From positions 124,001 to 188,000 of IMG/VR virus record IMGVR_UViG_3300028829_003504: DNA of 64,000 nt; one strand, given 5' to 3'. Numbering within the stretch: the stretch's first letter is position 1; each line of letters opens with the position of its first letter. Shown here in pieces: positions 43,492 to 54,194 of this stretch. A model generated the notes under the pieces. That model had not been told where the DNA came from, did not search any database, and saw only the letters and a program-made list of their open reading frames with translations. Position numbers and translations under genes: made by a program.

Positions 43492-44541
43492 TTATGTATT
43501 TTGTAGACCTTGTTCGCGCATAGATACGCGCATCTTCTCTTTTTCAGATTTAGAAAACACCTCACCTATATCAAGGGTTAGTCTAGCACAACCATTAATG
43601 TCGGCGTGTTTTGCCAAGTACATAATATTATTAGACTCTCTCATGTTAGCAACCTCACTACTTAAGTCATAGTCGTTTGTAACTTTGTTATGTAGACCTT
43701 CCGCTGAATCCCCATCATCGTCTTCAACTATTTGGTCTAAGCTTGTGCTGAAATTAATCATAGTATTGGCCGAGCCTGACATAGCTAATTTTTTCTTCTG
43801 ACCTTGAGGCACAGTAAAGGCTATGCCGTACTCATGCTCAGAACTACTACAGGTCTGAGCATTAAACATCCACCACTTTATGTAGGAAGTTAAGGCACCT
43901 TTGTTTGCATCGTACTTGTTTAGAGCAATTATAACATTCTGTAGGAGACCTTGCCTTACGTCTAGGAAGTCGTATTGGTTATGAGGATTGGCCATAACGT
44001 GCTGCTTAGCCTGTGTGCTGCAAAGCCTTACGTATTCTTTCGCTACGTCTTGTTGATAGGCGTAAAACATCTTTAGGTAGTCAGTACTTTGATTGAAGCA
44101 TAAATATAAGTCGGACCGCTTTGTTGCGCCTAGGTCACGTTGGATTAGATCCAAATGCCTTGACCAACGGGCCCTGCGATTATCGAAGTTTGTAAGAAAT
44201 TTATCGTACAAACAATTAAACTCATCCTTATACCTATCCAACAAACGTTTAATGAAACAGTGGATAAAACTCCTCTCTATTCCAATCTTACGTATTAAGT
44301 TAAACTTCTTCTGCCTGTCAGACTCAAGATGTATCTGGCATAATATGTTAATGGCGTCTTCCCGTTCAAGAGCAACGAGTTTACGCTTTTTGTTTCTCGT
44401 TATCACCGATAGTATGTGAACCATTTGGGTATCAAATATATCAGTATGCAGGACAACGGGCTCAAGTGCATTATAGAGTAAGGTATCCATAATCTCACTT
44501 ATCTGGTCGCCCGTTAAGTTCTTGGTTTGGTCATCGGACAT
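43492..44541 (-). CDS. Sigma70-family sigma factor
   Basis: FLDVRQGLLQNVIIALNKYDANKGALTSYIKWWM matches region 2 (DLIQEG...AVDKFD..RG.KFSTYATWWI); TSLDQ matches region 3. Confidence 0.8.
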   Translation of the reverse strand: MSDDQTKNLTGDQISEIMDTLLYNALEPVVLHTDIFDTQMVHILSVITRNKKRKLVALEREDAINILCQIHLESDRQKKFNLIRKIGIERSFIHCFIKRLLDRYKDEFNCLYDKFLTNFDNRRARWSRHLDLIQRDLGATKRSDLYLCFNQSTDYLKMFYAYQQDVAKEYVRLCSTQAKQHVMANPHNQYDFLDVRQGLLQNVIIALNKYDANKGALTSYIKWWMFNAQTCSSSEHEYGIAFTVPQGQKKKLAMSGSANTMINFSTSLDQIVEDDDGDSAEGLHNKVTNDYDLSSEVANMRESNNIMYLAKHADINGCARLTLDIGEVFSKSEKEKMRVSMREQGLQNT

Positions 44542-44559
44542 TAAACAGACTACCTTAGA

Positions 44560-45219
44560 CTATGATTTCTTTTTGTTTCTTGGAGGGTGTTTTGACTTTA
44601 GGGTAGATGGAGTTCCCAACTCCGTACCGATAAATTCCACACTATCTTCATTATCGACCGTGCTAGCGAGTCCGTGAGATAGTTCGACTACTTCTTCGTC
44701 TACCTCTACCTCTTCGTATACATCACCAACTACCTCTACCTCTTCGTTGGATTCTAATGACTTAGTAGTAGGCATGCTTACGGCTGATGTAACACGAATA
44801 ACATCCGCAATATTTGTAGAAACTTTCTCACCCGTAAGCACGGATTGATGTACTTTAACAATGTCGTTAAGTACTTGGATATCTATAGTGTTCATACCAT
44901 TACTGTCTGGAGATTGCTTTAAAAGCTGCTCACAGTACCAAGTCAAAGCACCGACTTTAAGTGAGGCATCTTTAGATACTCCTACCCACTTAAGGGTTTG
45001 CTCTTGTGACGCCGCAAGTTGCTGAGTAATAAGTCCGAGCTTCTCTTGGACTTCGATACGATTCTCAACCTCAAGGGCATGAAGGACTTGAATCTCAGTC
45101 AATTGATCCAGTATGCCATCTCGTTGATTCTTCATAGAGTTAGCGCGATGTGTTGCTGTTTTCAGTTGCGTAATGAAGGCTCCTGATACGGTAGGAGCAT
45201 TTTCTTTGTTATCGGACAT
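44560..45219 (-). CDS. Hypothetical coiled-coil protein
   Basis: 219 aa. Confidence 0.7.
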   Translation of the reverse strand: MSDNKENAPTVSGAFITQLKTATHRANSMKNQRDGILDQLTEIQVLHALEVENRIEVQEKLGLITQQLAASQEQTLKWVGVSKDASLKVGALTWYCEQLLKQSPDSNGMNTIDIQVLNDIVKVHQSVLTGEKVSTNIADVIRVTSAVSMPTTKSLESNEEVEVVGDVYEEVEVDEEVVELSHGLASTVDNEDSVEFIGTELGTPSTLKSKHPPRNKKKS

Positions 45220-45453
45220 TTATTTTCCTTTGGGACAGTTTTCAATGGTTGCAGATTCTGGAAACTTAGAGGGATTGCCGTCAATGCCGCATGTATCACA
45301 GGTCATGACGTAACCTTTAGGTGTCAGTTTAGTTCTCTTAGCACATACTGTATTTACAGTTACATCAGGACTAAGGGTCTGCTTACGTGTAATTAGTCTA
45401 TGGAAAGAACGTTTTATTAAACTGGAACGTCTTGTACATCTACCGCATGCCAT
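45220..45453 (-). CDS. Small Cys-rich protein
   Basis: MACGRC...C...CDTC...CP; abuts neighbours; AGGAG RBS. Confidence 0.65.
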   Translation of the reverse strand: MACGRCTRRSSLIKRSFHRLITRKQTLSPDVTVNTVCAKRTKLTPKGYVMTCDTCGIDGNPSKFPESATIENCPKGK

Positions 45454-45454
45454 A

Positions 45455-46132
45455 TTAGGCTCCTTTACTTATAACAGCGTCAGCAGTGGCGATAAGATGT
45501 TTACAAAGACCAGGCGTCTCACCTGGGTTAGTAAAGTTAGGCTTATCACCGTTGCCATATATAATACGCGCCGCGCCGTACTTGGCGTTTGCATATTCCC
45601 ACATGTATGTATTATTCTCACAGTCACATGATACTAGGACTTTCTGATTCCTATCTGAAATCTTCAAGTCGTGAAGTCTACCTATGATAGTAACTTTATG
45701 ATCTCGCGGCGTAGCGTCAGGTCGCCATGTATCAAAATGCCTACATGTGGCTGTAACCGCAGGTAACCCTGACGCCGTCTTAGTACGCTTGAACTTTCTA
45801 ACTGTAGTCTCAGAGCCATTCTCCTTCATCAATCTAGGAGTATTACGGTACAGTTGCTTCAAAGTCAAACCTTTCTTAGAAAGAGATGTCTCGGGAAGCT
45901 GCTGCACCAGGTTCTGACCTTGCAAAGGCATTATACGAACCTGTCTTACTTTTTGCGCCCTAGTAGTTCTAGTGGCTGCTTTCTTCGGCTTTGCTTTTGC
46001 TGCCGTAGACTCAAGACCTTTATACTTAGTTTTACGTGTCGAGGTACGGGCTTTACTGGCGCGTTCAGCGTTACGCTTAGCTGGAGACTTGGTTTTCTTA
46101 ACAGAGGATTTAATTCCAGTGTATTTGGGCAT
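45455..46132 (-). CDS. SWIM-like Zn-finger protein with basic N-terminus
   Basis: VSCDCE...NP...GLCKHLIA. Confidence 0.7.
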   Translation of the reverse strand: MPKYTGIKSSVKKTKSPAKRNAERASKARTSTRKTKYKGLESTAAKAKPKKAATRTTRAQKVRQVRIMPLQGQNLVQQLPETSLSKKGLTLKQLYRNTPRLMKENGSETTVRKFKRTKTASGLPAVTATCRHFDTWRPDATPRDHKVTIIGRLHDLKISDRNQKVLVSCDCENNTYMWEYANAKYGAARIIYGNGDKPNFTNPGETPGLCKHLIATADAVISKGA

Positions 46133-46167
46133 GACTATTCACCTTTTCAATATAGATTAAAAGTAAA

Positions 46168-46608
46168 TTACTTATCGTGAGTCATCCATTTCAACCCTTC
46201 TAGAGTATCGTGCAATTTAAACAATCGAGTCTTAGTGCCTTCTTTTGTTTCACCTACGATATAAAGATTAGCGCTGTAATTACTAGGTACCTTATCTTTA
46301 ATCTGTTTAAGGGAGGCATAAGATTTCTTACCTTTCTTCTTACCCTTATACAATGAGTAGGAAGAATACTTTTCGCCCAACCAGCTCTTAACAATCTCAA
46401 GCATTTCATCAGGATATTTGTACTGCATCTCCTCGTCATTCAAACGATAGAACATCGTGTTTGCACCGCCCTTACCGACTAGGTAAGTAACGCCAGCAAC
46501 AGTTGCTAAGAACTGCCACTGGAAAATCTTTCTTTCTTCGGGAGTCAATGAAGCTTCTTTAAGTAAAGCTCCTTTCACTTGGTCATGTAGTACTTTAAAT
46601 GGATTCAC
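46168..46608 (-). CDS. Hypothetical protein at the end of the modification operon
   Basis: 146 aa, GTG start. Confidence 0.65.
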   Translation of the reverse strand: MNPFKVLHDQVKGALLKEASLTPEERKIFQWQFLATVAGVTYLVGKGGANTMFYRLNDEEMQYKYPDEMLEIVKSWLGEKYSSYSLYKGKKKGKKSYASLKQIKDKVPSNYSANLYIVGETKEGTKTRLFKLHDTLEGLKWMTHDK

Positions 46609-46622
46609 GTTACCGCCTGTAG

Positions 46623-47510
46623 TTACAATAGTTCTTTTGGTATTTTACCTAACCGAACATCGTTATATATCGCAACTACTGATTTAGAGTTTCGTATATT
46701 CCAGTCAGAGCTAAGTAGTTTATCGCTAAAGTTGTCTGCGATGTTAGTATCACCTAATTGAAAGTTCTGGTGAGGCTTAACTATACATTTTTTCAAGTCA
46801 TCGGCAAAGGCTTCACGTAACTGGCGTTTCTGAGGCTTGTGCATCTCCTCGTAAGTCCCGACCGATAACATTTCTGCCCACACACGGCAAGTAGTGAAAG
46901 GTATGTGGAAGATTTTATCTTTCTTGTAAGCCAAGTTCTGGAAGAAAGTATTTTGAATCTTTACGTCACCGCGAAAGTTAGATTGCCAGTACTTCTTAAC
47001 AATATCTTTGGCGTGCATACTAGGTTTCTTAGCAGTGGCGAAGTAGATATCTGAATCAAAGCCAACTACAATATGCTTTGCTGGGCAGTTACGTACTGCT
47101 TGCATCATAGGCCAGATACATTCAATTGAACTTTTCTTAATAAGACCTAACTTACCGACAGCATGTTTAACCCAACTCTTTAGGTGTTTCTCGGAAGAGT
47201 TTAAAATAACTGGATTAAACTCCAAGCCGTAAACTTCTGAGGCATGTTTAGCTGCTTTGAAGTCGGTACTTTCATGTGTGTCTAAAGTAAACGAAGTGAT
47301 TAATGGGCGGTGTCCTAGAGCTAGCATGGCCCATAGTACCGCGTGGCTATCCATACCGCTAGACATAAATACGGAAGTACTTTGTGTAGTAGGTATAGGC
47401 CGCAGGGCACTCATTAATGCCATCTTCATGTCAGCAGGGCGAGAGCAGTTGTCCTCAAGCTCTTGTCTAAACTTCTCTCGCATCTTTTTTGTGCTTTCTG
47501 ATATAGCCAC
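46623..47510 (-). CDS. Asparagine-synthetase-like ATP-dependent amide ligase (synthetase domain only)
   Basis: PP-loop VFMSSGMDS, STDFKAA, VGFDSDIYF (cf. GEGADELF), IPF, K..LREAF, FQLG; no Ntn glutaminase domain. Confidence 0.8.
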   Translation of the reverse strand: MAISESTKKMREKFRQELEDNCSRPADMKMALMSALRPIPTTQSTSVFMSSGMDSHAVLWAMLALGHRPLITSFTLDTHESTDFKAAKHASEVYGLEFNPVILNSSEKHLKSWVKHAVGKLGLIKKSSIECIWPMMQAVRNCPAKHIVVGFDSDIYFATAKKPSMHAKDIVKKYWQSNFRGDVKIQNTFFQNLAYKKDKIFHIPFTTCRVWAEMLSVGTYEEMHKPQKRQLREAFADDLKKCIVKPHQNFQLGDTNIADNFSDKLLSSDWNIRNSKSVVAIYNDVRLGKIPKELL

Positions 47511-47520
47511 GCACAGTCTC

Positions 47521-48534
47521 CTATTTTACGTTAAAGAACTCGTCTGCTTTGACAAACGCCGTAAGCAACTCAGGTTCGCGTGTAGGATCGAATACAGGTA
47601 CGCTGTATTGCGCTTTCAGCTTATCACGTAAGGCAGCGTATACTTCGAAGCTTACTTCACGGCTAAATAAAGAGATTGCACCTAGACGTACATTAGGATT
47701 AGAAAAACGAGCAACCTGTAAGTTGAATCGAATTGTCTCATCTAAATCAATAGGCGTAGTAGTATCATTAATAATAGTACGGCTAGGATCGTGGCAGGCG
47801 ATCATCATATCAGGCTGTGAGCCTTGAATGATCGCATAAGTAGAACCGCCGAAACTAGGATGCAATATAGAGCCTTGACCTTCAACAACGTCAATGTGAT
47901 TATGGGGTGCAGAAGGTGTCTCTTGCTCAAGTGCCCCTACAATGAAATCAGCAGGTATCGTGTCGTTGGTAATGCCTGCACCGCTGATCAAGTAGCCTGT
48001 CTGGCCAGTTGCAACGAAACGACTGGAGTAACTTTGATTTAGCAATTCTTTCCATACTGATAAGGCTGTGAACTTCTTGCCTGATGCACAATCTGTACCG
48101 AAGGTAAGAATACGATAACCTGAACGTTCCTCGCCCGTACCTTTAATCCAATCGATAGGTTTATGTCGGAAATCGTATACTTCTATTCCGTTTAAGTCAC
48201 CAAACTCAGCAAGCAACACAGGCTCAAGTTTAGCATGAGAGCCTGATGCTATATTTAAGCCCAGGTCAATTGCTTCTTTACATACGCTAAGTACTCTAGA
48301 ATTGAAGTTACTTACTTCTCGAGGACTGAATCCGAGTAATAATGTTTTAGCGCCTGCTTCTTTAGCTTGCGCTAAACTCATATCAGGAAGACCTAGGTCG
48401 TAGGCTTCTTCGCTATCACGGTGTTGAGCCAGACATCGCTCAGGGGCCCAATCGACAATACCACATGCTGTCTTTACTTTACGGAATATAGTTTCGGAGC
48501 CTACATATATAATAAATGGATGTTGAATATTCAT
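47521..48534 (-). CDS. DUF1611 / DgcN-like P-loop protein (N-acetyltransferase family)
   Basis: Start MNIQHPF; KTACGIVDW.PE, DLGLPDMS, GAKTLLLG, GTDCASGKKFTAL, FVATGQTG, DFIVGA, VVEGQGSILHPSF, GSQPD...CH. Confidence 0.88.
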   Translation of the reverse strand: MNIQHPFIIYVGSETIFRKVKTACGIVDWAPERCLAQHRDSEEAYDLGLPDMSLAQAKEAGAKTLLLGFSPREVSNFNSRVLSVCKEAIDLGLNIASGSHAKLEPVLLAEFGDLNGIEVYDFRHKPIDWIKGTGEERSGYRILTFGTDCASGKKFTALSVWKELLNQSYSSRFVATGQTGYLISGAGITNDTIPADFIVGALEQETPSAPHNHIDVVEGQGSILHPSFGGSTYAIIQGSQPDMMIACHDPSRTIINDTTTPIDLDETIRFNLQVARFSNPNVRLGAISLFSREVSFEVYAALRDKLKAQYSVPVFDPTREPELLTAFVKADEFFNVK

Positions 48535-48548
48535 TTGTTTACCTTGTG

Positions 48549-49325
48549 TTATTTGATGCAGACCCAGCCTGCGAAGTTTAAATGACGATAGAAGCAATCG
48601 ATGTTCTTAAAGCCCGCAAGCGTTAACATTTCCTCATTGGCTCTAGCGGTTTGCGGAACAAGAACGCCTTCGAGTGAGGCTTTCTTGCGATCAATATCTT
48701 CGTAAGAATAACCATTACTGTGTTTCATTTTATGATACTCACCGACAAATAATTTGTTCAATCTACTACCACTACCTAGAATCTTCTCCACAAAGATAAA
48801 GGCTCCGCCGACAGGTAAGGCATCATAGATATTCTGAATGATTTCAAGTCGGTACTCTATAGGAGTAAACTGGATAGTTAGTATAGAAAGAATCAAACCA
48901 TGCTTCTCAGGCCAACCTATAGTTTGAGGACACTGAAAAATATGAGGCTGCCTCAAATCATCTCGATACACTTCAACGTTTCGGTTCTCAATGAAACGAT
49001 CGTCAAGCTCGGTCAGCATAGGCTCAGATATCTCAATAGCATAGCAGCCTATAGTAGGGTCTTTAGTGAACGGGGCGAGTGCTTCACCTCGACTAGCTCC
49101 TAGATCAAGGACAGTACGTAGACCGAAGTTTGAGCGGTTTTGCTCTGCTCTAGGTAAAGCATTCAATACGTCCATACCTAACTGGTAAGTCAGACTACGC
49201 ATCATGTCGTAGCTAGGTATACTACGTGATAGCATGTTATCAAAAGATTGTGCAACATCCTGGTTAAACTCCCACTTGTCGCCTGGGACGTGCGTATCTT
49301 CTCGGACTTTGGGTTCGTCTTTCAC
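48549..49325 (-). CDS. cmoA: CmoA-like carboxy-S-adenosylmethionine synthase
   Basis: WEFNQDVAQSFDNMLSRSIPSY (cf. FPDMIQRSVPGY), DLGASRG, TIQF, FVEK, K.SNGYS..DI.RKK.SLEGV, LNFAG. Confidence 0.88.
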   Translation of the reverse strand: MKDEPKVREDTHVPGDKWEFNQDVAQSFDNMLSRSIPSYDMMRSLTYQLGMDVLNALPRAEQNRSNFGLRTVLDLGASRGEALAPFTKDPTIGCYAIEISEPMLTELDDRFIENRNVEVYRDDLRQPHIFQCPQTIGWPEKHGLILSILTIQFTPIEYRLEIIQNIYDALPVGGAFIFVEKILGSGSRLNKLFVGEYHKMKHSNGYSYEDIDRKKASLEGVLVPQTARANEEMLTLAGFKNIDCFYRHLNFAGWVCIK

Positions 49326-49438
49326 CGATAGTCTCCTTATGTTTCTGTTGTAGGGTTTCGACGGTTTGAATAAAGTACATATATCTTACCGTATATAGAC
49401 GGTGATATTTAAGTCTTTACAGTAATCTATTGACCTAA

Positions 49439-49804
49439 TTACCAGCTATCTTTATAGGGGTTTTCCGTTTCAGTCAGGTCATACTTAGATAGAGGGACTT
49501 CATCGGATAGGTAGGTAATAGGGTCTCTTAAAATACATAATACACTTCGAGTAACGTAATCTGACACAGGTGTGGCTGCTTGAAGTATGTACCCTCCTGA
49601 GTCAATCTGTGCGCCTGTATAGGTCGAGTAGTTAATACTGTTTTTAAGTCGCTCAACATCTAGTGCGAACTCAGGATCAGTAACGGTATCCCGTTTGTGG
49701 TCAAAAGCCATGTGCGTACCAAGCTCAATCAAACGTAAACCTAATATCTTAGATCGCTCTCTGCTATAGAAAGGTAGAATTAGATTCTTGAATAGTTTAA
49801 GCAA
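49439..49804 (-). CDS. Hypothetical protein
   Basis: 121 aa, TTG start uncertain. Confidence 0.55.
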   Translation of the reverse strand: MLKLFKNLILPFYSRERSKILGLRLIELGTHMAFDHKRDTVTDPEFALDVERLKNSINYSTYTGAQIDSGGYILQAATPVSDYVTRSVLCILRDPITYLSDEVPLSKYDLTETENPYKDSW

Positions 49805-49937
49805 GGCAGAACAGTCCGATACAAAAGCCTGTAAGAAAAGCCACTGATAATCCAGCTGTCATGTAGATGTTGAATCTATCAATGATTTTCTTACGAGGCC
49901 ATGTGCTTTTGAATAAGTAGATCTTATTAAAGAGCAT
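49797..49937 (-). CDS. 46-aa membrane peptide
   Basis: ATG directly after the transferase stop; MLFNKIYLFKSTWPRKKIIDRFNIYMTAGLSVAFLTGFCIGLFCLA. Confidence 0.5.
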   Translation of the reverse strand: MLFNKIYLFKSTWPRKKIIDRFNIYMTAGLSVAFLTGFCIGLFCLA

Positions 49938-51002
49938 CTATATACCCTTACCGCTTACGGGGCCTTTAGTATAGTCTAAACCACAGCCATCGGCAATAAC
50001 CTTAAGCAGATTGTTGACAATCTCTTTAGTTATACAGTACATCATTTGCGGAGGTACGGAACGACCAAGACGCTCCCATTGCTGCTCATACGTACCTATT
50101 AACTTGAAGTCTTCCGGGAAACCGCACACTACCTTCAATTCTTCGATCGTGTACTTACGCTGTACGCCCTCAAACGTCTCGATAAACCCACCAGAACTAA
50201 ACTGAGCCGTAGGTGAAGTAGCACCGTCACTAGCCGTAATGGTAGGATGAGGAACTTGCGCAGTAGCCCAGTTAAGGGTTCCTCCGGCTTCTTTAGATCT
50301 AAGCATAGCGATGTGCGGCAGTTTCTCCTGCACAGTAACCTGTCTGTGTGCAGGTTTAGGGAACACAGGCTTCAAGTCGTACTTCTTAGCAAGGTCTTTT
50401 CTGATGCCGACGTAGATTATACGTTCACGCCCTTGAGGAACACCTAACCAAGAACCGTTTATCTTTGCAGCACGTACAACGTAACCGCATTCAGCAAGCT
50501 TACCAGTTATTTCTTTGAAGTAACCTTTAGCATCACCTTTAATAAGGCCAGTAACGTTTTCTGCTACGAACACCCAAGGCTTTAAACCTTTTAACTCACG
50601 GCAGAATTCAAAGAACAAATCGTCTACACGTTGCTTAACGCCTTCTGAGTAATCCTTTGCTTCGCCCCATCCATCTTCACGAGTACCTGCTGTAGAGAAC
50701 GCACTGCATGGTGGGCTTCCGTCAAGAAAAGGTAAGTGTCCTTTCTTTATTCCTAAAAGCTTCAATACGTCGGAAGGTTTAACCTTTCGGATGTCTGAAC
50801 CATCGCAGAAGCTTTTAACGTGGTTGGCTTCATACGTTTCACGCGCAACGGGAATAAATTCGTTAGCGTATTTTATATCAATACCCGCCATTTTGTGCCC
50901 TGTACAAGAACCACCACAACCTGAGAAGAAACTTGCTCCTAAGAACAATTTCTTCTTCTTGTTTATCTGCTTCATTGTAGGAATCGTAGGAGGAAGTTTC
51001 AT
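49938..51002 (-). CDS. DNA cytosine-C5 transferase, predicted carboxymethyltransferase
   Basis: Motif I FFSGCGG, IV GSPPCSAFS, VI AENV, VIII VPQGRERI, X QQWERLGRSVPP (Asn replaced by Arg). Start placed at MKLPP. Confidence 0.9.
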   Translation of the reverse strand: MKLPPTIPTMKQINKKKKLFLGASFFSGCGGSCTGHKMAGIDIKYANEFIPVARETYEANHVKSFCDGSDIRKVKPSDVLKLLGIKKGHLPFLDGSPPCSAFSTAGTREDGWGEAKDYSEGVKQRVDDLFFEFCRELKGLKPWVFVAENVTGLIKGDAKGYFKEITGKLAECGYVVRAAKINGSWLGVPQGRERIIYVGIRKDLAKKYDLKPVFPKPAHRQVTVQEKLPHIAMLRSKEAGGTLNWATAQVPHPTITASDGATSPTAQFSSGGFIETFEGVQRKYTIEELKVVCGFPEDFKLIGTYEQQWERLGRSVPPQMMYCITKEIVNNLLKVIADGCGLDYTKGPVSGKGI

Positions 51003-51115
51003 ATAACCCAACCTAGTTTCGTTTGAATTTGAATAAGAGTATAGTTAAATATAATAGATGCCTGTTCCATAAGAGTAAGCATCAATATAATCTCTTGTAT
51101 ACATATATGCGGCAT
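50999..51115 (-). CDS. 38-aa peptide coupled to the transferase start
   Basis: AGGA RBS; TGA overlaps the next ATG (ATGA). Confidence 0.35.
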   Translation of the reverse strand: MPHICIQEIILMLTLMEQASIIFNYTLIQIQTKLGWVI

Positions 51116-51132
51116 AATATGTCCTATTAGAA

Positions 51133-52023
51133 TTATTTACCTGCGAAGCGGTACTTACATCGAGGACAACACTGATCAAGTTCATCATCAAATGTATCCT
51201 CACCGTATTCCTCAAATGAGGCAGGACCTTTACCTTTTGACTTAGAATCAGTAGACTCGTCACTGGAACCTAGTGAAGGTAACTCGGGAAGTGTTTTAAT
51301 TTTAAGGGCGTCAAGCCCCATAGTATCGATATCAAACCCTCCGTCGCGTATTTCAAGTTCTTCCACCATGAAAGCAAGTTTACTATTGTCGAACTCACCA
51401 CCATGTGCGTTAGCTGCAATGTTTGCGGCGAATTCTACTTTCTTATCGGACCAGTCTACTACGCGGAATGGAATACGGTAGTTTCGATTATCTCCTAGAA
51501 TAACAGTCATGAATCCTTCTTCGATAGTACCGTGCTGGCAATCTTTAATAGGATTAGTTATGATTTTAGTCTCATAACCTTTCTTCCTGATACTAGAAGT
51601 ACGTTGATGTCCAGATACTAAGTGGCCTGAACGTCGGTTAAAAACGATACCTGACAGGTCACCGAATTCTTCGTATGACTTACCTAAGTTATCTAATCTA
51701 CGTGCAGTAATGAAACGTGGGTTATAGCTCGCACCTCTTAAGTCAGTTAGGCCCCAATCTCCTTTACGTTTAGAAGTCTTCTTATTCTCCCGAACCTTCT
51801 TAACTTTAAATTTCTTTGTGGCTACTTTTGATATACCTGATATCTCAAGTGAACCAGAAGCAGAAGTGGACCCAGACTTAGGTTTAACTATTTTATCCAG
51901 TTTCCCTGATTTCTTGGCCTTTTTAGTCTTTTTAGCTACTTTAGACTCAGAGGTAGCCTTAGATTTCTTTGTTAATTTCGCAGCTTTCCCTCTAACAGCT
52001 ACTTTCGTTTCTTTCTTTGCCAT
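51133..52023 (-). CDS. ParB/Srx N-terminal-domain protein with Lys-rich N-terminus and C-terminal Zn ribbon
   Basis: YNPRFI...LGKS.EEFG...IVFN....LVSGHQR...NIAAN..GGEFD; CPRCKYRF. Confidence 0.85.
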   Translation of the reverse strand: MAKKETKVAVRGKAAKLTKKSKATSESKVAKKTKKAKKSGKLDKIVKPKSGSTSASGSLEISGISKVATKKFKVKKVRENKKTSKRKGDWGLTDLRGASYNPRFITARRLDNLGKSYEEFGDLSGIVFNRRSGHLVSGHQRTSSIRKKGYETKIITNPIKDCQHGTIEEGFMTVILGDNRNYRIPFRVVDWSDKKVEFAANIAANAHGGEFDNSKLAFMVEELEIRDGGFDIDTMGLDALKIKTLPELPSLGSSDESTDSKSKGKGPASFEEYGEDTFDDELDQCCPRCKYRFAGK

Positions 52024-52119
52024 TTTTTCGCACCTTAAACAAGAATACCCAATAATCTTAATTGACTATTGGGTATTCTTTACAGTTTTGTGTTTAGTAG
52101 TAGTAGTATATCCACTACA

Positions 52120-52533
52120 CTAAAGTTCGTCGTCCGTATCATCAAAATCTTCGTCGTCATCTTCACCAGAATCTTCGTCGTCATCTTCACCAGAATCTTC
52201 GTCGTCATCACCGAAGTCCGCAGAACCATCACTATCTTCACCGGTCTTAGTATCATCGTCTACTAAGGAGTCAGGATCAGATCCACCTGCTTTCTTATCT
52301 TTCTTTTTCTTATCATCTTCTTCACCTAGCTCTTTTATTAACTCTTCGTTACGTTCAGCCATGCGCTTCTTGGCCATTTTCTTTTCATGCTCAATAAGAT
52401 CCTTATCGTCTAAGGTAGACGGATTGTTAATCCCAGGAACATTAGGTCTATAAGGCTGCTTACTAAAGGCTTTTAGCATAAACTTATCAGTAACTAAGCA
52501 GTCGGATTTTAGAAACAAAAGCACAGGGCGCAT
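52120..52533 (-). CDS. Hypothetical protein with acidic repeat tail
   Basis: 27-nt EDSGEDDD repeats at about 52146-52213. Confidence 0.7.
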   Translation of the reverse strand: MRPVLLFLKSDCLVTDKFMLKAFSKQPYRPNVPGINNPSTLDDKDLIEHEKKMAKKRMAERNEELIKELGEEDDKKKKDKKAGGSDPDSLVDDDTKTGEDSDGSADFGDDDEDSGEDDDEDSGEDDDEDFDDTDDEL

Positions 52534-54194
52534 TAGATATCTCCTAACTCAGGAAGTTCATTGACTAAGTCTTGCATTACTGATTTACTTAACTTAGCGA
52601 GGGCTTTACGAATGTTAGCAGGCGTCATACCCATCGACATACCTTCCTTGATGTTATTAAGGAACTTAGTATCTGAGGCTATTTGTTTTTTAGCGTCGTC
52701 TGGTCGTCCGCCTACCTTCAATGATCTAGTAACGGCATTGAACTTATTAGATGCGGCAGGTGTAGAAAAGAACTTGCTTCCGTCAGTAAATACAGAACTG
52801 ATAATTACTTTCTTAGCTGTATGTATTTGCATCTTAGCCATAAGACCATTAATGGAAATCACAGCCTGTTTGCCGTCTACGTAAGTTGTAATGTTAGCCT
52901 GGTTTGGATTCAGTATAGGTTCTATGTTCAAAATAGACGAGCTGGTATCAGTATTATTTTTAAGTTGCTTCAATAACTTAATAGCAACATCGAATGCAGT
53001 ACCTTTAGATTCGAACTGTACTGCGTCACGGCCATCAACAGCAGACTCAATATTCTTCATACCTGCTTTCTTCATTGCATCAGCCATGAACTCACCGAGC
53101 TCCGAGCCAATACCCTGAGCGATAGTATAGCCTTGAGCTAGCTCTTGGTTGATACGGCGTTGCTTGTCACTCAAGCCGGAGGTTAAAGCTTTGTTTTTCT
53201 TAACCTTCTTAGGTTGCTTCACACTAAGTATGTTGGCGTACGGTACTTTGAAAGGACCAGGCATGATAACTTCATCGTCATAAACCAAAGCATATTTTTT
53301 CAATGTTTTGTGTATTGCATCAGCCGTTCTAGTCTTTCCGTCTTCGTCAGTATATTCGAAAGATAAGACTCCATCAATGTCATCTTGGGTAAACTTAGGT
53401 GTAGGTTTACGGGCTTTAAGAACTTTATTAGCAGCTTTCTGGGCAGCTTTGTTTGAAGTATCAGAAACTTTATTAGCAACGCCCGTACCAGCAGCATTAC
53501 CTAATAAGGTATTGAACTTCATTACTTCTTTAAGATCTTTGTTGTACGCTGTCTGGGCGTCAAGTAACTTAGGAAGTTTAGAGGCTACAGCTTTCAATCT
53601 AGTACCTAACGTGTCAAAGCCTTTACGTTTCTTCAAACGGTCTATAGTACGTTGGTCGAAGGAGGCTTTAAGGAATGCACCTAAGTTATCAACTAATGCA
53701 GATTCGGCTTGACCTAATTTCTTTTTAAGCTTCAACAAGATATCGTACTGAGCAACAACTACTTTACCTTTAGCGCCCCATACTACCTTTGCAGTTTCTT
53801 GTTGATTCTTGGTAGATGACGTTGAAGACATCTTACCTGCTTCTTTACCCAACAAAGTACTAAAGGCGTTAAGACCTTTCATACCCTTGTCGTGTGCTTC
53901 ACGTAGGACAGCTAGCTTGGAGGCTTGTACCGCTACACGCTTTAATCTAACAGGTAAAGTATCGAAGCCTTTACGTTTCTTCAATTTAGCAATAGACTTA
54001 TCATCTAGTTCCGTTTTAAGAAATTCTGTAAGGGTAGATAGTAAACTATTTTCGTCTTCGCCTAACTTCTTTTTAAGTTTGATCAATGTGTCGAAGTTAG
54101 CAAGGAGGGTTTTTCCCTTAGCACCCCAAATAAGTTTAGCTGTTGCCTGCTGCTTCTTGTTGGCTGACTCTGAAATCAGTACATATCTAGCCAT
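52533..54194 (-). CDS. Basic protein with duplicated ~115-aa N-terminal domain, possibly virion-internal
   Basis: TAK..WGAKGK...LKKKLG...LKKRKGFDTL..RLK.VA occurs twice. Confidence 0.8.
   Translation of the reverse strand: MARYVLISESANKKQQATAKLIWGAKGKTLLANFDTLIKLKKKLGEDENSLLSTLTEFLKTELDDKSIAKLKKRKGFDTLPVRLKRVAVQASKLAVLREAHDKGMKGLNAFSTLLGKEAGKMSSTSSTKNQQETAKVVWGAKGKVVVAQYDILLKLKKKLGQAESALVDNLGAFLKASFDQRTIDRLKKRKGFDTLGTRLKAVASKLPKLLDAQTAYNKDLKEVMKFNTLLGNAAGTGVANKVSDTSNKAAQKAANKVLKARKPTPKFTQDDIDGVLSFEYTDEDGKTRTADAIHKTLKKYALVYDDEVIMPGPFKVPYANILSVKQPKKVKKNKALTSGLSDKQRRINQELAQGYTIAQGIGSELGEFMADAMKKAGMKNIESAVDGRDAVQFESKGTAFDVAIKLLKQLKNNTDTSSSILNIEPILNPNQANITTYVDGKQAVISINGLMAKMQIHTAKKVIISSVFTDGSKFFSTPAASNKFNAVTRSLKVGGRPDDAKKQIASDTKFLNNIKEGMSMGMTPANIRKALAKLSKSVMQDLVNELPELGDI

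What the first reader, a model, noticed from the sequence alone, without database searches (positions are those of the whole stretch)
47521..48534. DUF1611/DgcN-like enzyme wedged between CmoA and the amide ligase
Seen: full-length DUF1611 motifs, with only 10-14 nt gaps to both neighbours. Established: the characterised member DgcN is a D-glutamate N-acetyltransferase that partners with the racemase DgcA in marine bacteria. No DgcA-like enolase-superfamily gene is in this window. Inference: it is repurposed, for example to N-acetylate an amine appended to carboxymethyl-C or to make the amine donor.
Basis: partly seen in the sequence, partly recalled or inferred. Interest (0 to 1): 0.78.

Follow-up and report, generated by a model that had tools for sequence, protein, structure and literature searches.

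The report
Phage DgcN-like enzyme beside DNA-modification ligase
A jumbo phage carries a relative of a bacterial D-glutamate acetyltransferase inside its operon for carboxymethylating cytosine in DNA, always next to the amide ligase, which suggests an undescribed extra step in this recently discovered DNA hypermodification.

Summary
Window 47521-48534 (-) encodes an intact 337-aa DUF1611 protein. It lies 14 nt after a CmoA homologue and 10 nt before an asparagine-synthetase-like ligase. No DgcA-like gene is in the window.

The setting is the known CmoA/CmoX/CmoY system (PMC12783734), which makes 5-carboxymethylcytosine and amidates it. That paper does not mention DUF1611.

The gene is not a DgcN orthologue. 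It scores 296 bits against the DgcN model (cut-off 480; bacterial DgcN score 475-499). It belongs to a separate clade whose members with a readable flank all carry the ligase downstream and never DgcA. In contrast, about 64 of 80 bacterial loci have DgcA downstream.

The fold matches the DgcN crystal structure 7XRJ (TM 0.86). All conserved motifs are kept, but residues next to them change from hydrophobic to polar.

Some related phage modules add a racemase-like PLP enzyme, a D-cysteine-desulfhydrase-family enzyme, a glycosyltransferase-like protein or a GNAT.

Best reading: an acyl-CoA-dependent N-acyltransferase acting on an amino-acid-type amine in the 5cxmC pathway. Whether it acts before or after ligation is unresolved. 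This is a new variant of a known system, and cultured Erwinia and Dickeya phages could test it.

The parts
47521..48534 (-). The finding: a phage-type DUF1611 protein, sister subfamily of DgcN (337 aa). It has an N-terminal Rossmann-like domain and a DTBS-like P-loop domain (G146-T-D-C-A-S-G152-K153-K154).
   Evidence: Pfam PF07755 6.8e-49 and PF17396 7.5e-8. NCBIfam DgcN 296 bits, below the 480 cut-off. PDB 7XRJ by phmmer 1.2e-54. AF2 model pLDDT 95; Foldseek match to 7XRJ, TM 0.86. Phage-type clade in the trees.
46623..47510 (-). Asparagine-synthetase-like AMP-forming amide ligase without a glutaminase domain (CmoY-type, 295 aa). It is the invariant downstream partner of DUF1611.
   Evidence: Pfam Asn_synthase 1.4e-3 and phrog_26038 4.6e-85. 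BLASTP to SpCmoY (L109:4660-5475): 25% identity, E 4e-17. Sister to the Y3 and Sen-NF ligases in the tree.
48549..49325 (-). CmoA homologue, the putative carboxy-SAM synthase (258 aa).
   Evidence: TIGR00740 CmoA 4.8e-29, below the cut-off. phrog_4752 2.5e-58. PDB CmoA 1IM8 5.9e-19 and 4GEK 1.2e-16. 26% identity, E 4e-22, to the validated SpCmoA.
49938..51011 (-). CmoX-type DNA cytosine-C5 (carboxy)methyltransferase. The true start is probably the ATG at 51002.
   Evidence: Pfam DNA_methylase 6.5e-45. 36% identity, E 2e-69, to SpCmoX. The SPPC motif is present, and R317 aligns with SpCmoX R350, the residue that binds the Cx-SAM carboxylate (criteria from PMC12783734).
49439..49804 (-). orf121: a small acidic protein (pI 5.3) between CmoX and CmoA, with no family assignment.
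   Evidence: No Pfam, PHROG or NCBIfam hit. No similarity to the chorismate mutase that occupies this position in L107.
46168..46608 (-). orf146: a small basic protein (pI 9.45) present in the jumbo-phage CmoA/ligase modules examined, with or without DUF1611.
   Evidence: phrog_23597 2e-37. Homologous to PaBG_179, Y3_023 and AD1_021 and found in most of the loci examined.
51133..52023 (-). ParB-like protein upstream of CmoX (296 aa, pI 9.7).
   Evidence: 48% identity, E 2e-48, to PaBG_176, which is annotated 'ParB-like nuclease'. No Pfam hit of its own. ParBc neighbours of CmoX are reported in PMC12783734.

Best explanation
The gene encodes a phage-specific paralogue of the D-glutamate N-acetyltransferase DgcN. 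It serves as an auxiliary enzyme of the 5-carboxymethylcytosine (5cxmC) DNA hypermodification pathway. Proposed pathway: CmoA makes carboxy-SAM, CmoX puts a carboxymethyl group on cytosine C5 in DNA, and the Asn-synthetase-like ligase adenylates that carboxylate and joins it to an amine. The DUF1611 enzyme then uses an acyl-CoA (most simply acetyl-CoA) to N-acylate an alpha-amino-acid-type amine of the appended moiety. The final base would be an N-acylated amino-acid amide of 5cxmC, not a simple glycine amide. I lean slightly toward action after ligation, on a tethered amino-acid head group, over action on the free donor before ligation. Shown here: homology, fold, motif conservation, clade separation from DgcN, and obligate linkage to the ligase. 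Inferred: the acyl-transfer chemistry, the acyl donor, the acceptor, and the order of steps.
For: (1) Context. The module is ParB-like, CmoX, orf121, CmoA, DUF1611, ligase, orf146. CmoX keeps SPPC and the Arg equivalent to SpCmoX R350. (2) Linkage. In every phage or viral locus with a readable flank (L001-L022, L106-L108, L114), the ligase lies directly downstream of DUF1611, often with overlapping stop and start. The exceptions are four Erwinia-phage loci (L008-L011) with an Alr-like gene in between. None has DgcA. About 64 of 80 bacterial loci have DgcA downstream and none has CmoA, CmoX or the ligase. In the phage collection DUF1611 occurs in 34 records; the loci fetched from that group all carry the CmoA-ligase pair. 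(3) Phylogeny. The phage-type proteins form one clade apart from DgcN (100/100; SH-aLRT 99). DgcN-model scores are 282-355 bits for phage-type proteins and 475-499 bits for bacterial ones. (4) Chemistry is plausibly kept. 53 positions are at least 90% identical in both clades, including the P-loop, TGQTG, D191, D196-F197, EGQG, H225-P226, QPD, C247 and R252. The AF2 model (pLDDT 95) matches the 7XRJ DgcN structure at TM 0.86. (5) The substrate pocket looks changed. Clade-specific substitutions sit next to invariant motifs and go from hydrophobic to polar or smaller: A-[ILV]-D-A becomes N-N-D-T, W81 becomes Y/I/M, F224 becomes S/R/T, V231 becomes G, L277 becomes R, and position 125 becomes R/K. 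(6) An amino-acid theme recurs in sister modules: an Alr-like PLP enzyme between DUF1611 and the ligase and a D-cysteine-desulfhydrase-family PLP enzyme in L106. A chorismate mutase beside CmoA in L107 supports the Cx-SAM branch.
Against: There is no biochemical evidence. The DgcN paper (PMC10030869) could not be read, so I do not know the catalytic residues of DgcN and cannot check them. The protein is acidic (pI 5.2; phage-type median 5.6), like CmoA and unlike the basic CmoX, ligase and orf146. That hints at a small-molecule substrate, though SpCmoY, which acts on DNA, is also acidic at 5.78. The ligases closest to the window's work without DUF1611. One related module (L021) carries a GNAT acetyltransferase as well, so acetylation may not be the DUF1611 job there. 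If the ligase couples an alpha-amine, as SpCmoY does with glycine, no amine remains to acylate unless the donor is a diamino compound. The window protein is a long-branch member and departs from the phage-type consensus at several of the diagnostic positions (V81, T189, L224, S231, A234, F277).
Confidence: 0.5

Rival explanations
1. Donor-supply enzyme. DUF1611 works on a free metabolite, as DgcN does. It N-acylates the alpha-amine of a (D-)diamino or otherwise bifunctional amino acid, and the ligase then couples the remaining amine of that product to 5cxmC.
For: The pI is acidic, like that of the metabolite enzyme CmoA and the accessory PLP enzymes. DgcN's known substrate is a free amino acid. 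Small-molecule PLP enzymes (Alr-like, D-Cys-desulfhydrase family) are interleaved with it in related operons.
Against: Phage-type-specific gains are Asn, Thr, Ser and Arg/Lys, not the acidic residues expected to hold a distal ammonium group. The window ligase's nearest relatives lack DUF1611. The pI argument fails on the calibrator SpCmoY.
Confidence: 0.25
2. Amide-forming transferase. The ligase only activates the 5cxmC carboxylate, as an adenylate or a thioester, and DUF1611 delivers a (D-)amino-acid amine to it. The product, N-(cytosin-5-ylacetyl)-amino acid, is a direct analogue of DgcN's product N-acetyl-D-glutamate.
For: The 5-carboxymethyl group is chemically a substituted acetyl group (inference). 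DUF1611 and ligase genes are tightly coupled, with overlapping stop and start codons. The pocket is enlarged and more polar.
Against: SpCmoY alone completes amide formation (PMC12783734). Ligases 47-52% identical to the window's occur without DUF1611. The protein has no basic surface signature. I know of no Asn-synthetase-like enzyme that hands an activated acyl group to a second protein (own knowledge).
Confidence: 0.08
3. A host-metabolism gene unrelated to DNA modification. For example, it acetylates D-glutamate to starve peptidoglycan synthesis or to detoxify D-amino acids, and merely sits in this operon.
For: It is a clear DgcN homologue with all shared motifs intact.
Against: It was never seen outside CmoA/ligase modules in the phage loci examined, across at least seven divergent lineages, and was always adjacent to the ligase. 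It scores about 180 bits below the DgcN cut-off and has altered pocket residues.
Confidence: 0.07
4. A non-catalytic partner: DUF1611 acts as a structural or specificity subunit of the ligase and does not transfer an acyl group.
For: Obligate adjacency and translational coupling.
Against: 53 family-wide positions, including the P-loop and all conserved polar motifs, are retained under long divergence (30-45% identity). That pattern is typical of an active enzyme.
Confidence: 0.05

Closest known systems
DgcN, D-glutamate N-acetyltransferase (EC 2.3.1.312; NCBIfam NF041892; crystal structure PDB 7XRJ; Yu et al. 2023, ISME J, cited through PMC11747546, PMC12363236 and bioRxiv 10.1101/2024.10.14.618325)
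   Same: Same two-domain DUF1611 fold (Foldseek TM 0.86, E 7.8e-37). Full-length sequence match (phmmer 1.2e-54, residues 3-320). 53 positions are at least 90% identical with the DgcA-linked bacterial proteins, including every conserved motif.
   Different: Scores 296 bits against a 480-bit equivalog cut-off. Sits in a separate clade that holds all the phage loci. No DgcA partner. Pocket-adjacent residues change from hydrophobic to polar. Embedded in a DNA-modification operon and not next to an amino-acid ABC transporter and racemase.
CmoA/CmoX/CmoY system of Synechococcus phage S-B43: 5-carboxymethylcytosine and its glycine amide (PMC12783734)
   Same: Homologues of all three enzymes are present and adjacent. 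CmoX keeps SPPC and the Arg that binds the Cx-SAM carboxylate. A ParB-like neighbour is present, as reported for many such contigs.
   Different: S-B43 has no DUF1611, no orf146 homologue detected and no ParB-like gene in its module. The window ligase is only 25% identical to SpCmoY and lies in the other deep ligase clade. The paper and its held supplements do not mention DUF1611.
Related jumbo-phage modules without DUF1611: Pseudomonas phage PaBG, Erwinia phages Y3, Yoloswag and phB78, Salmonella phage Sen-NF
   Same: Same backbone genes: CmoX 55% identical (PaBG), ligase 47-52% (Y3, Sen-NF), CmoA 41-44%, plus orf146 homologues.
   Different: The accessory slot differs. Y3 and Sen-NF have a 2OG-Fe(II) oxygenase after the ligase, and PaBG and phB78 have nothing extra. 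Within the single genus Alexandravirus, AD1 has DUF1611 with one ligase type and phB78 has another ligase type without DUF1611.
5-acetylaminomethyl-deoxyuridine pathway of Pseudomonas phage PaMx11 (Lee et al., PNAS 2018 and NAR 2022; recalled from my own knowledge, not checked here)
   Same: A precedent for N-acetylation as a late step in a phage DNA-base hypermodification.
   Different: A thymidine, not cytosine, pathway. The handle is a hydroxymethyl pyrophosphate, not a carboxymethyl group. As I recall, the acetyltransferase is not a DUF1611 protein.

Membership tests
DUF1611 (Pfam PF07755 + PF17396) | Both domain models matched above the gathering score | tested here: met
   166.5 bits vs 25, and 33.1 bits vs 22.6
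DUF1611 (Pfam PF07755 + PF17396) | Two-domain fold of the solved members (7XRJ, 2OBN, 2G0T) | tested here: met
   AF2 model pLDDT 95, pTM 0.91. Foldseek TM 0.86, 0.85 and 0.76 to the three structures
DgcN equivalog (NCBIfam NF041892, EC 2.3.1.312) | Score at or above the curated cut-off of 480 bits | tested here: not met
   296.1 bits. Six other phage-type proteins score 282-355; four bacterial ones score 475-499
DgcN equivalog (NCBIfam NF041892, EC 2.3.1.312) | Genomic partnership with the enolase-superfamily racemase DgcA | tested here: not met
   No DgcA in the window (tblastn; profile HMM best E 0.67) or in any phage locus. About 64 of 80 bacterial loci have it adjacent. The rest of the 262-kb genome was not seen.
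DgcN equivalog (NCBIfam NF041892, EC 2.3.1.312) | Placement inside the DgcA-linked clade | tested here: not met
   Separate clade: 100*, 100/100, SH-aLRT 99 with a broader outgroup
DgcN equivalog (NCBIfam NF041892, EC 2.3.1.312) | Catalytic and substrate-binding residues of DgcN | tested here: inconclusive
   All 53 positions shared at 90% or more are kept, but 15 clade-specific positions near them differ. The residues identified in the DgcN structure paper could not be read.
DgcN equivalog (NCBIfam NF041892, EC 2.3.1.312) | Acetyl-CoA-dependent N-acetylation of D-glutamate | not testable with these tools
   Needs an enzyme assay
CmoA/CmoX/CmoY 5cxmC hypermodification module (PMC12783734) | CmoX: C5-methyltransferase fold with the SPPC motif and the Arg equivalent to SpCmoX R350 | tested here: met
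   GSPPCSAFS is present and R317 aligns with R350; 36% identity, E 2e-69
CmoA/CmoX/CmoY 5cxmC hypermodification module (PMC12783734) | CmoA homologue encoded alongside | tested here: met
   TIGR00740 4.8e-29, below the equivalog cut-off. PDB CmoA 1IM8 5.9e-19. SpCmoA E 4e-22. Prephenate-binding residues were not examined.
CmoA/CmoX/CmoY 5cxmC hypermodification module (PMC12783734) | AMP-forming Asn-synthetase-like ligase alongside | tested here: met
   E 4e-17 to SpCmoY, 25% identity. Pfam Asn_synthase hit is weak, 1.4e-3. The amine-pocket residues could not be compared because they appear only in figures.
CmoA/CmoX/CmoY 5cxmC hypermodification module (PMC12783734) | 5cxmC or a derivative actually present in the phage DNA | not testable with these tools
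   Needs LC-MS of nucleosides or nanopore signal analysis

The most novel reading that the evidence does not exclude
These jumbo phages decorate cytosine with a side chain that has not been described: 5cxmC amide-linked to a D-configured (or otherwise non-standard) amino acid whose amine is N-acylated by a dedicated DgcN paralogue. In some Erwinia phages the side chain would be further elaborated by a racemase-like PLP enzyme and a glycosyltransferase. As far as I know (no search was made), this would be the first D-amino-acid-containing DNA base and a third enzymatic layer on the CmoA/X/Y pathway. An even bolder form is that DUF1611 itself forms the amide bond on DNA from an activated 5cxmC.
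Probability: 0.2. Interest if true: 0.85.

Novelty: new variant of a known kind. Interest (0 to 1): 0.66.

Why it matters
The CmoA/CmoX/CmoY pathway was described only in late 2025, with one product, the glycine amide of 5cxmC. Its authors noted that other amide modifications remain to be found. This finding identifies a well-defined, diverse, phage-restricted enzyme subfamily of roughly 20-30 clusters at 50% identity. It is welded to the ligase in one branch of these systems, and it co-occurs with amino-acid-transforming PLP enzymes, a glycosyltransferase-like protein and a GNAT. That predicts a richer family of cytosine hypermodifications.

It also gives a ready experimental handle. Cultured phages of one genus, Alexandravirus, differ naturally in having or lacking the gene. 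It would further assign a second physiological role to the DUF1611 fold, an unusual P-loop acyltransferase. The result may interest people working on phage counter-defence and on enzymatic DNA labelling.

Tried and rejected
1. The DgcN structure paper could not be read, so DgcN's catalytic residues could not be checked one by one. I used conservation between the clades instead.
2. Isoelectric point as a test of DNA-acting versus metabolite-acting. The window's CmoX, ligase, orf146 and ParB-like proteins are basic (9.2-9.7), while CmoA and DUF1611 are acidic (5.2-5.5). But the validated DNA-acting SpCmoY is 5.78, so I give this little weight.
3. Congruence of the DUF1611 and ligase trees. One apparent exchange (L004) is not significant (AU p = 0.073), so I claim neither strict co-evolution nor free reassortment.
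4. The sigma-70 promoter and terminator scan of 44000-52600 gave counts equal to shuffles. It says nothing about operon limits in a jumbo phage.
5. orf121 as a diverged chorismate mutase: no similarity to the L107 enzyme.
6. The metagenome scan yielded only 4 loci. A megablast of the locus against the phage collection found nothing.
7. A search for DgcA in viral contigs with a single protein found nothing, but that method reaches only close relatives.
8. The nearest non-phage sisters of the phage clade (P0128, P0129, P0139) lie on short contigs with uninformative neighbours.
9. No literature held here links DUF1611 to phage DNA modification.
Full report
**1. What is in the sequence**

On the minus strand, an ATG at 48534 opens a 337-codon ORF that ends at the TAG at 47521-47523. 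It matches both Pfam models of the DUF1611 family over their full lengths: PF07755 at E 6.8e-49 and PF17396 at E 7.5e-8. The gene upstream (48549-49325) ends 14 nt before the ATG. The gene downstream (46623-47510, GTG start) begins 10 nt after the stop.

The window is part of a viral contig of about 262 kb, IMGVR_UViG_3300028829_003504. This 64-kb stretch is a replication and repair region: DnaB, type II topoisomerase, UvdE, RecA, primase, SSB and a sigma-like factor. There is no near-identical DNA in the phage collection.

**2. The neighbourhood is the CmoA/CmoX/CmoY module**

- The upstream gene is a CmoA homologue: TIGR00740 at 4.8e-29, PDB CmoA 1IM8 at 5.9e-19, and the validated SpCmoA at 4e-22.
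- Beyond a 121-codon ORF lies a cytosine-C5 methyltransferase, 36% identical (E 2e-69) to SpCmoX. It carries the SPPC motif, and its R317 aligns with SpCmoX R350. Those are the two criteria used in PMC12783734 to call carboxymethyltransferases.
- The downstream gene is an Asn-synthetase-like ligase without a glutaminase domain, 25% identical (E 4e-17) to SpCmoY.
- Flanking these are a ParB-like gene (51133-52023; 48% to PaBG_176) and a small basic protein, orf146 (46168-46608). orf146 recurs in the related modules examined.

In S-B43 this pathway makes 5-carboxymethylcytosine, and SpCmoY amidates it with glycine. Neither the paper nor its held supplements mention DUF1611. No other paper in the held library links DUF1611 to phage DNA modification.

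**3. A relative of DgcN, not a DgcN**

The best solved relative is 7XRJ, titled 'N-acetyltransferase DgcN' (phmmer 1.2e-54, residues 3-320). An AlphaFold model (pLDDT 95, pTM 0.91) superposes on it at TM 0.86 and on the two structural-genomics DUF1611 structures at 0.76-0.85. More distant matches are DTBS-, CobB- and ParA-type P-loops. The family's P-loop reads GTDxxxGKK, without the Ser/Thr that normally holds Mg in such NTPases. From general knowledge of P-loop NTPases, I infer this fits a CoA-binding role better than an ATP-hydrolysing one.

Against the curated DgcN equivalog model, the window protein scores 296 bits where 480 are required. Six other phage-type proteins score 282-355. Four bacterial proteins score 475-499.

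**4. Context survey**

I fetched 80 bacterial genome loci. About 64 have a DgcA homologue immediately downstream, and none has CmoA, CmoX or the ligase. A genuine example, Photobacterium (L016), has an amino-acid ABC transporter, DgcN and an MR_MLE racemase in a row.

Every viral or phage-like locus with a readable downstream flank has the ligase there, and none has DgcA. These comprise:
- 11 IMG/VR loci;
- 4 metagenome loci;
- 34 cultured Erwinia and Dickeya jumbo-phage records;
- 8 assembly contigs chosen across the tree (a ninth, L115, ends just after the gene).

Stop and start codons commonly overlap by 4 to 32 nt. Gene order around the pair varies: CmoX-CmoA-DUF1611-ligase, CmoX-DUF1611-ligase-x-CmoA, or CmoA-DUF1611-ligase with CmoX about 16 kb away. 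The DUF1611-then-ligase order does not vary. The one exception is four Erwinia-phage loci (L008-L011), where an extra gene sits between them.

The window holds no DgcA by tblastn or by a 61-sequence profile (best E 0.67).

**5. Phylogeny**

- In a 158-sequence tree, the bacterial DgcA-linked proteins form one starred clade on a 0.49 branch, and all phage-context proteins lie on the other side.
- A careful tree with DgcN outgroups gives 100/100 for the phage-type clade.
- Adding representatives from an exhaustive search of 1.84 billion proteins (1372 family representatives at E<=1e-3) yields three groups. These are a distant DUF1611 group, the DgcN group holding all ten DgcA anchors, and a 31-row phage-type clade (SH-aLRT 99) holding all twelve phage anchors.
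- A member of a sub-clade that lacked an anchor (P0123) again showed CmoX, CmoA, DUF1611, ligase and an orf146 homologue.
- The nearest non-phage sisters lie on short contigs with uninformative neighbours.

**6. Kept and changed residues**

Fifty-three positions are at least 90% identical in both clades. They include the P-loop (146-154), TGQTG (176-180), D191, D196-F197, E203, EGQG (218-221), H225-P226, QPD (240-242), C247 and R252.

Fifteen positions separate the clades. They lie next to those motifs, at the C-terminal ends of the strands of the P-loop domain and at the domain junction in the model:
- DgcN A-[ILV]-D-A becomes N-N-D-T;
- the invariant W81 becomes Y/I/M;
- F224 becomes S/R/T;
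- V231 becomes G;
- G234 becomes S;
- L277 becomes R;
- position 125 becomes R/K.

I read this as the same chemistry with a larger, more polar acceptor pocket. That is inference, because I had no model coordinates and could not read the DgcN structure paper. The window protein and its 84% relative P0002 sit on a long branch and deviate from the phage-type consensus at several of these positions.

**7. An optional, swappable accessory**

The window ligase's closest relatives (47-52% identity) are in Erwinia phages Y3 and Yoloswag and in Salmonella phage Sen-NF. These have no DUF1611. Y3 and Sen-NF, whose loci were read, carry a 2OG-Fe(II) oxygenase after the ligase instead. PaBG (CmoX 55% identical) has neither accessory.

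Within the genus Alexandravirus, AD1 has CmoA-DUF1611-ligase, while phB78 has CmoA plus a different ligase type and no DUF1611.

On the ligase tree, the presence of DUF1611 needs three changes and spans both deep ligase clades; SpCmoY belongs to one of them. The DUF1611 and ligase trees are broadly congruent. One possible exchange is not significant (AU p = 0.073).

**8. Accessory genes in sister modules**

- Four Erwinia-phage loci (L008-L011, which include pEa_SNUABM_3, _17 and _1) carry a 311-aa alanine-racemase-fold protein between DUF1611 and the ligase. Hits are PF01168 at 4e-14 and TIGR00492 at 3e-14. The PLP-lysine motif VVKGNFYGHG is kept. By eye, the Tyr of the 'LYG' motif appears replaced.
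- They and others also carry a 420-aa GT-B-like protein between CmoA and DUF1611. This rests on an Atlas lead and a weak Glycos_transf_1 hit in the L021 homologue.
- L106 carries a PLP enzyme of the D-cysteine-desulfhydrase family (TIGR01275, 1e-25).
- L107 carries a chorismate mutase beside CmoA, which fits CmoA's need for prephenate (PMC12783734).
- L021 carries a GNAT acetyltransferase two genes after the ligase.
- None of these accessory genes has a homologue in the window.

**9. Interpretation**

I consider it well supported (about 0.8) that DUF1611 belongs to the 5cxmC pathway. That it remains an acyl-CoA-dependent N-acyltransferase acting on an amino-acid-type amine is reasonable (about 0.5-0.6) but untested.

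The order of steps is open.
- For action on the tethered adduct: the pocket-opening substitutions with gains of Arg/Lys rather than acidic residues, the dispensability of DUF1611 for closely related ligases, and, from memory, the precedent of late acetylation in the PaMx11 thymidine pathway.
- For action on a free donor: DgcN's own substrate class, the acidic pI, and the interleaved small-molecule PLP enzymes. The pI argument is weakened by SpCmoY, which acts on DNA at pI 5.78.
- Less likely rivals: a role as the amide-forming transferase itself, a host-directed D-Glu acetylase, or a non-catalytic ligase subunit.

**10. Verdict**

This is a new variant of a known system, involving a phage-restricted sister subfamily of DgcN not described in the literature held here. 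Cultured Erwinia and Dickeya phages that naturally differ in the gene offer a direct test.

Noticed in passing
window 46168-46608 (-): orf146 (phrog_23597, pI 9.45) is a small basic protein with homologues in the jumbo-phage CmoA/ligase modules examined, with or without DUF1611 (PaBG_179, Y3_023, AD1_021, L004, L006, L018, L106-L108). None was detected in the S-B43 module. It may be an unrecognised component of the system, possibly DNA-binding.
   Followed up: partly
L008:8008-8943 (+), also L009-L011 (Erwinia phages pEa_SNUABM_3, _17, _1): An alanine-racemase-fold PLP protein (311 aa) is inserted between DUF1611 and the ligase. The PLP-lysine motif is kept, but the second catalytic Tyr appears replaced (ALTGY where Alr has LYG). 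It may not be a classical two-base racemase.
   Followed up: partly
L008:5718-6980 (+), L002:5718-6980, L021:4709-5980: A 420-aa GT-B / GT4-like protein (pI 9.1) sits between CmoA and DUF1611 in several Erwinia phages and one metagenome contig. This hints that the cytosine adduct is also glycosylated there.
   Followed up: partly
L106:9058-10035; L107:4622-5089; L021:8557-9465: Other accessory genes occur inside DUF1611-type modules: a D-cysteine-desulfhydrase-family PLP enzyme (L106), a chorismate mutase beside CmoA (L107; it would supply prephenate for Cx-SAM) and a GNAT acetyltransferase (L021).
   Followed up: partly
L103:6152-6790 (Erwinia phage Y3), L104:5877-6524 (Salmonella phage Sen-NF): In the phages whose ligase is closest to the window's, a 2OG-Fe(II) oxygenase (PF13640) follows the ligase where no DUF1611 is present. 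It is an alternative tailoring enzyme candidate, for example for hydroxylation or oxidative trimming of the appended amine.
   Followed up: no
L114:2532-4880; L113:1486-3615 (Erwinia phage phB78); Alexandravirus records: CmoX genes are interrupted or enlarged. L114 has a 782-aa CmoX with Hint, intein-splicing and LAGLIDADG hits. Alexandravirus CmoX is a 709-aa ORF that matches the window's CmoX in two pieces, and it lies about 16 kb from the CmoA-DUF1611-ligase genes, after a ParB-like gene.
   Followed up: partly
L001 (Dickeya phage AD1) vs L110 (Erwinia phage phB78), same genus: Cassette swapping at one conserved genomic position (about 12-15 kb) among related jumbo phages. AD1 has CmoA-DUF1611-ligase of type I, phB78 has CmoA-ligase of type II, and Y3 has CmoA-ligase-oxygenase. 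This looks like diversifying exchange of DNA-modification chemistry.
   Followed up: partly
window 49439-49804 (-): orf121 is a small acidic ORF between CmoX and CmoA. It has no detectable family and no similarity to the chorismate mutase found at that position in L107.
   Followed up: partly
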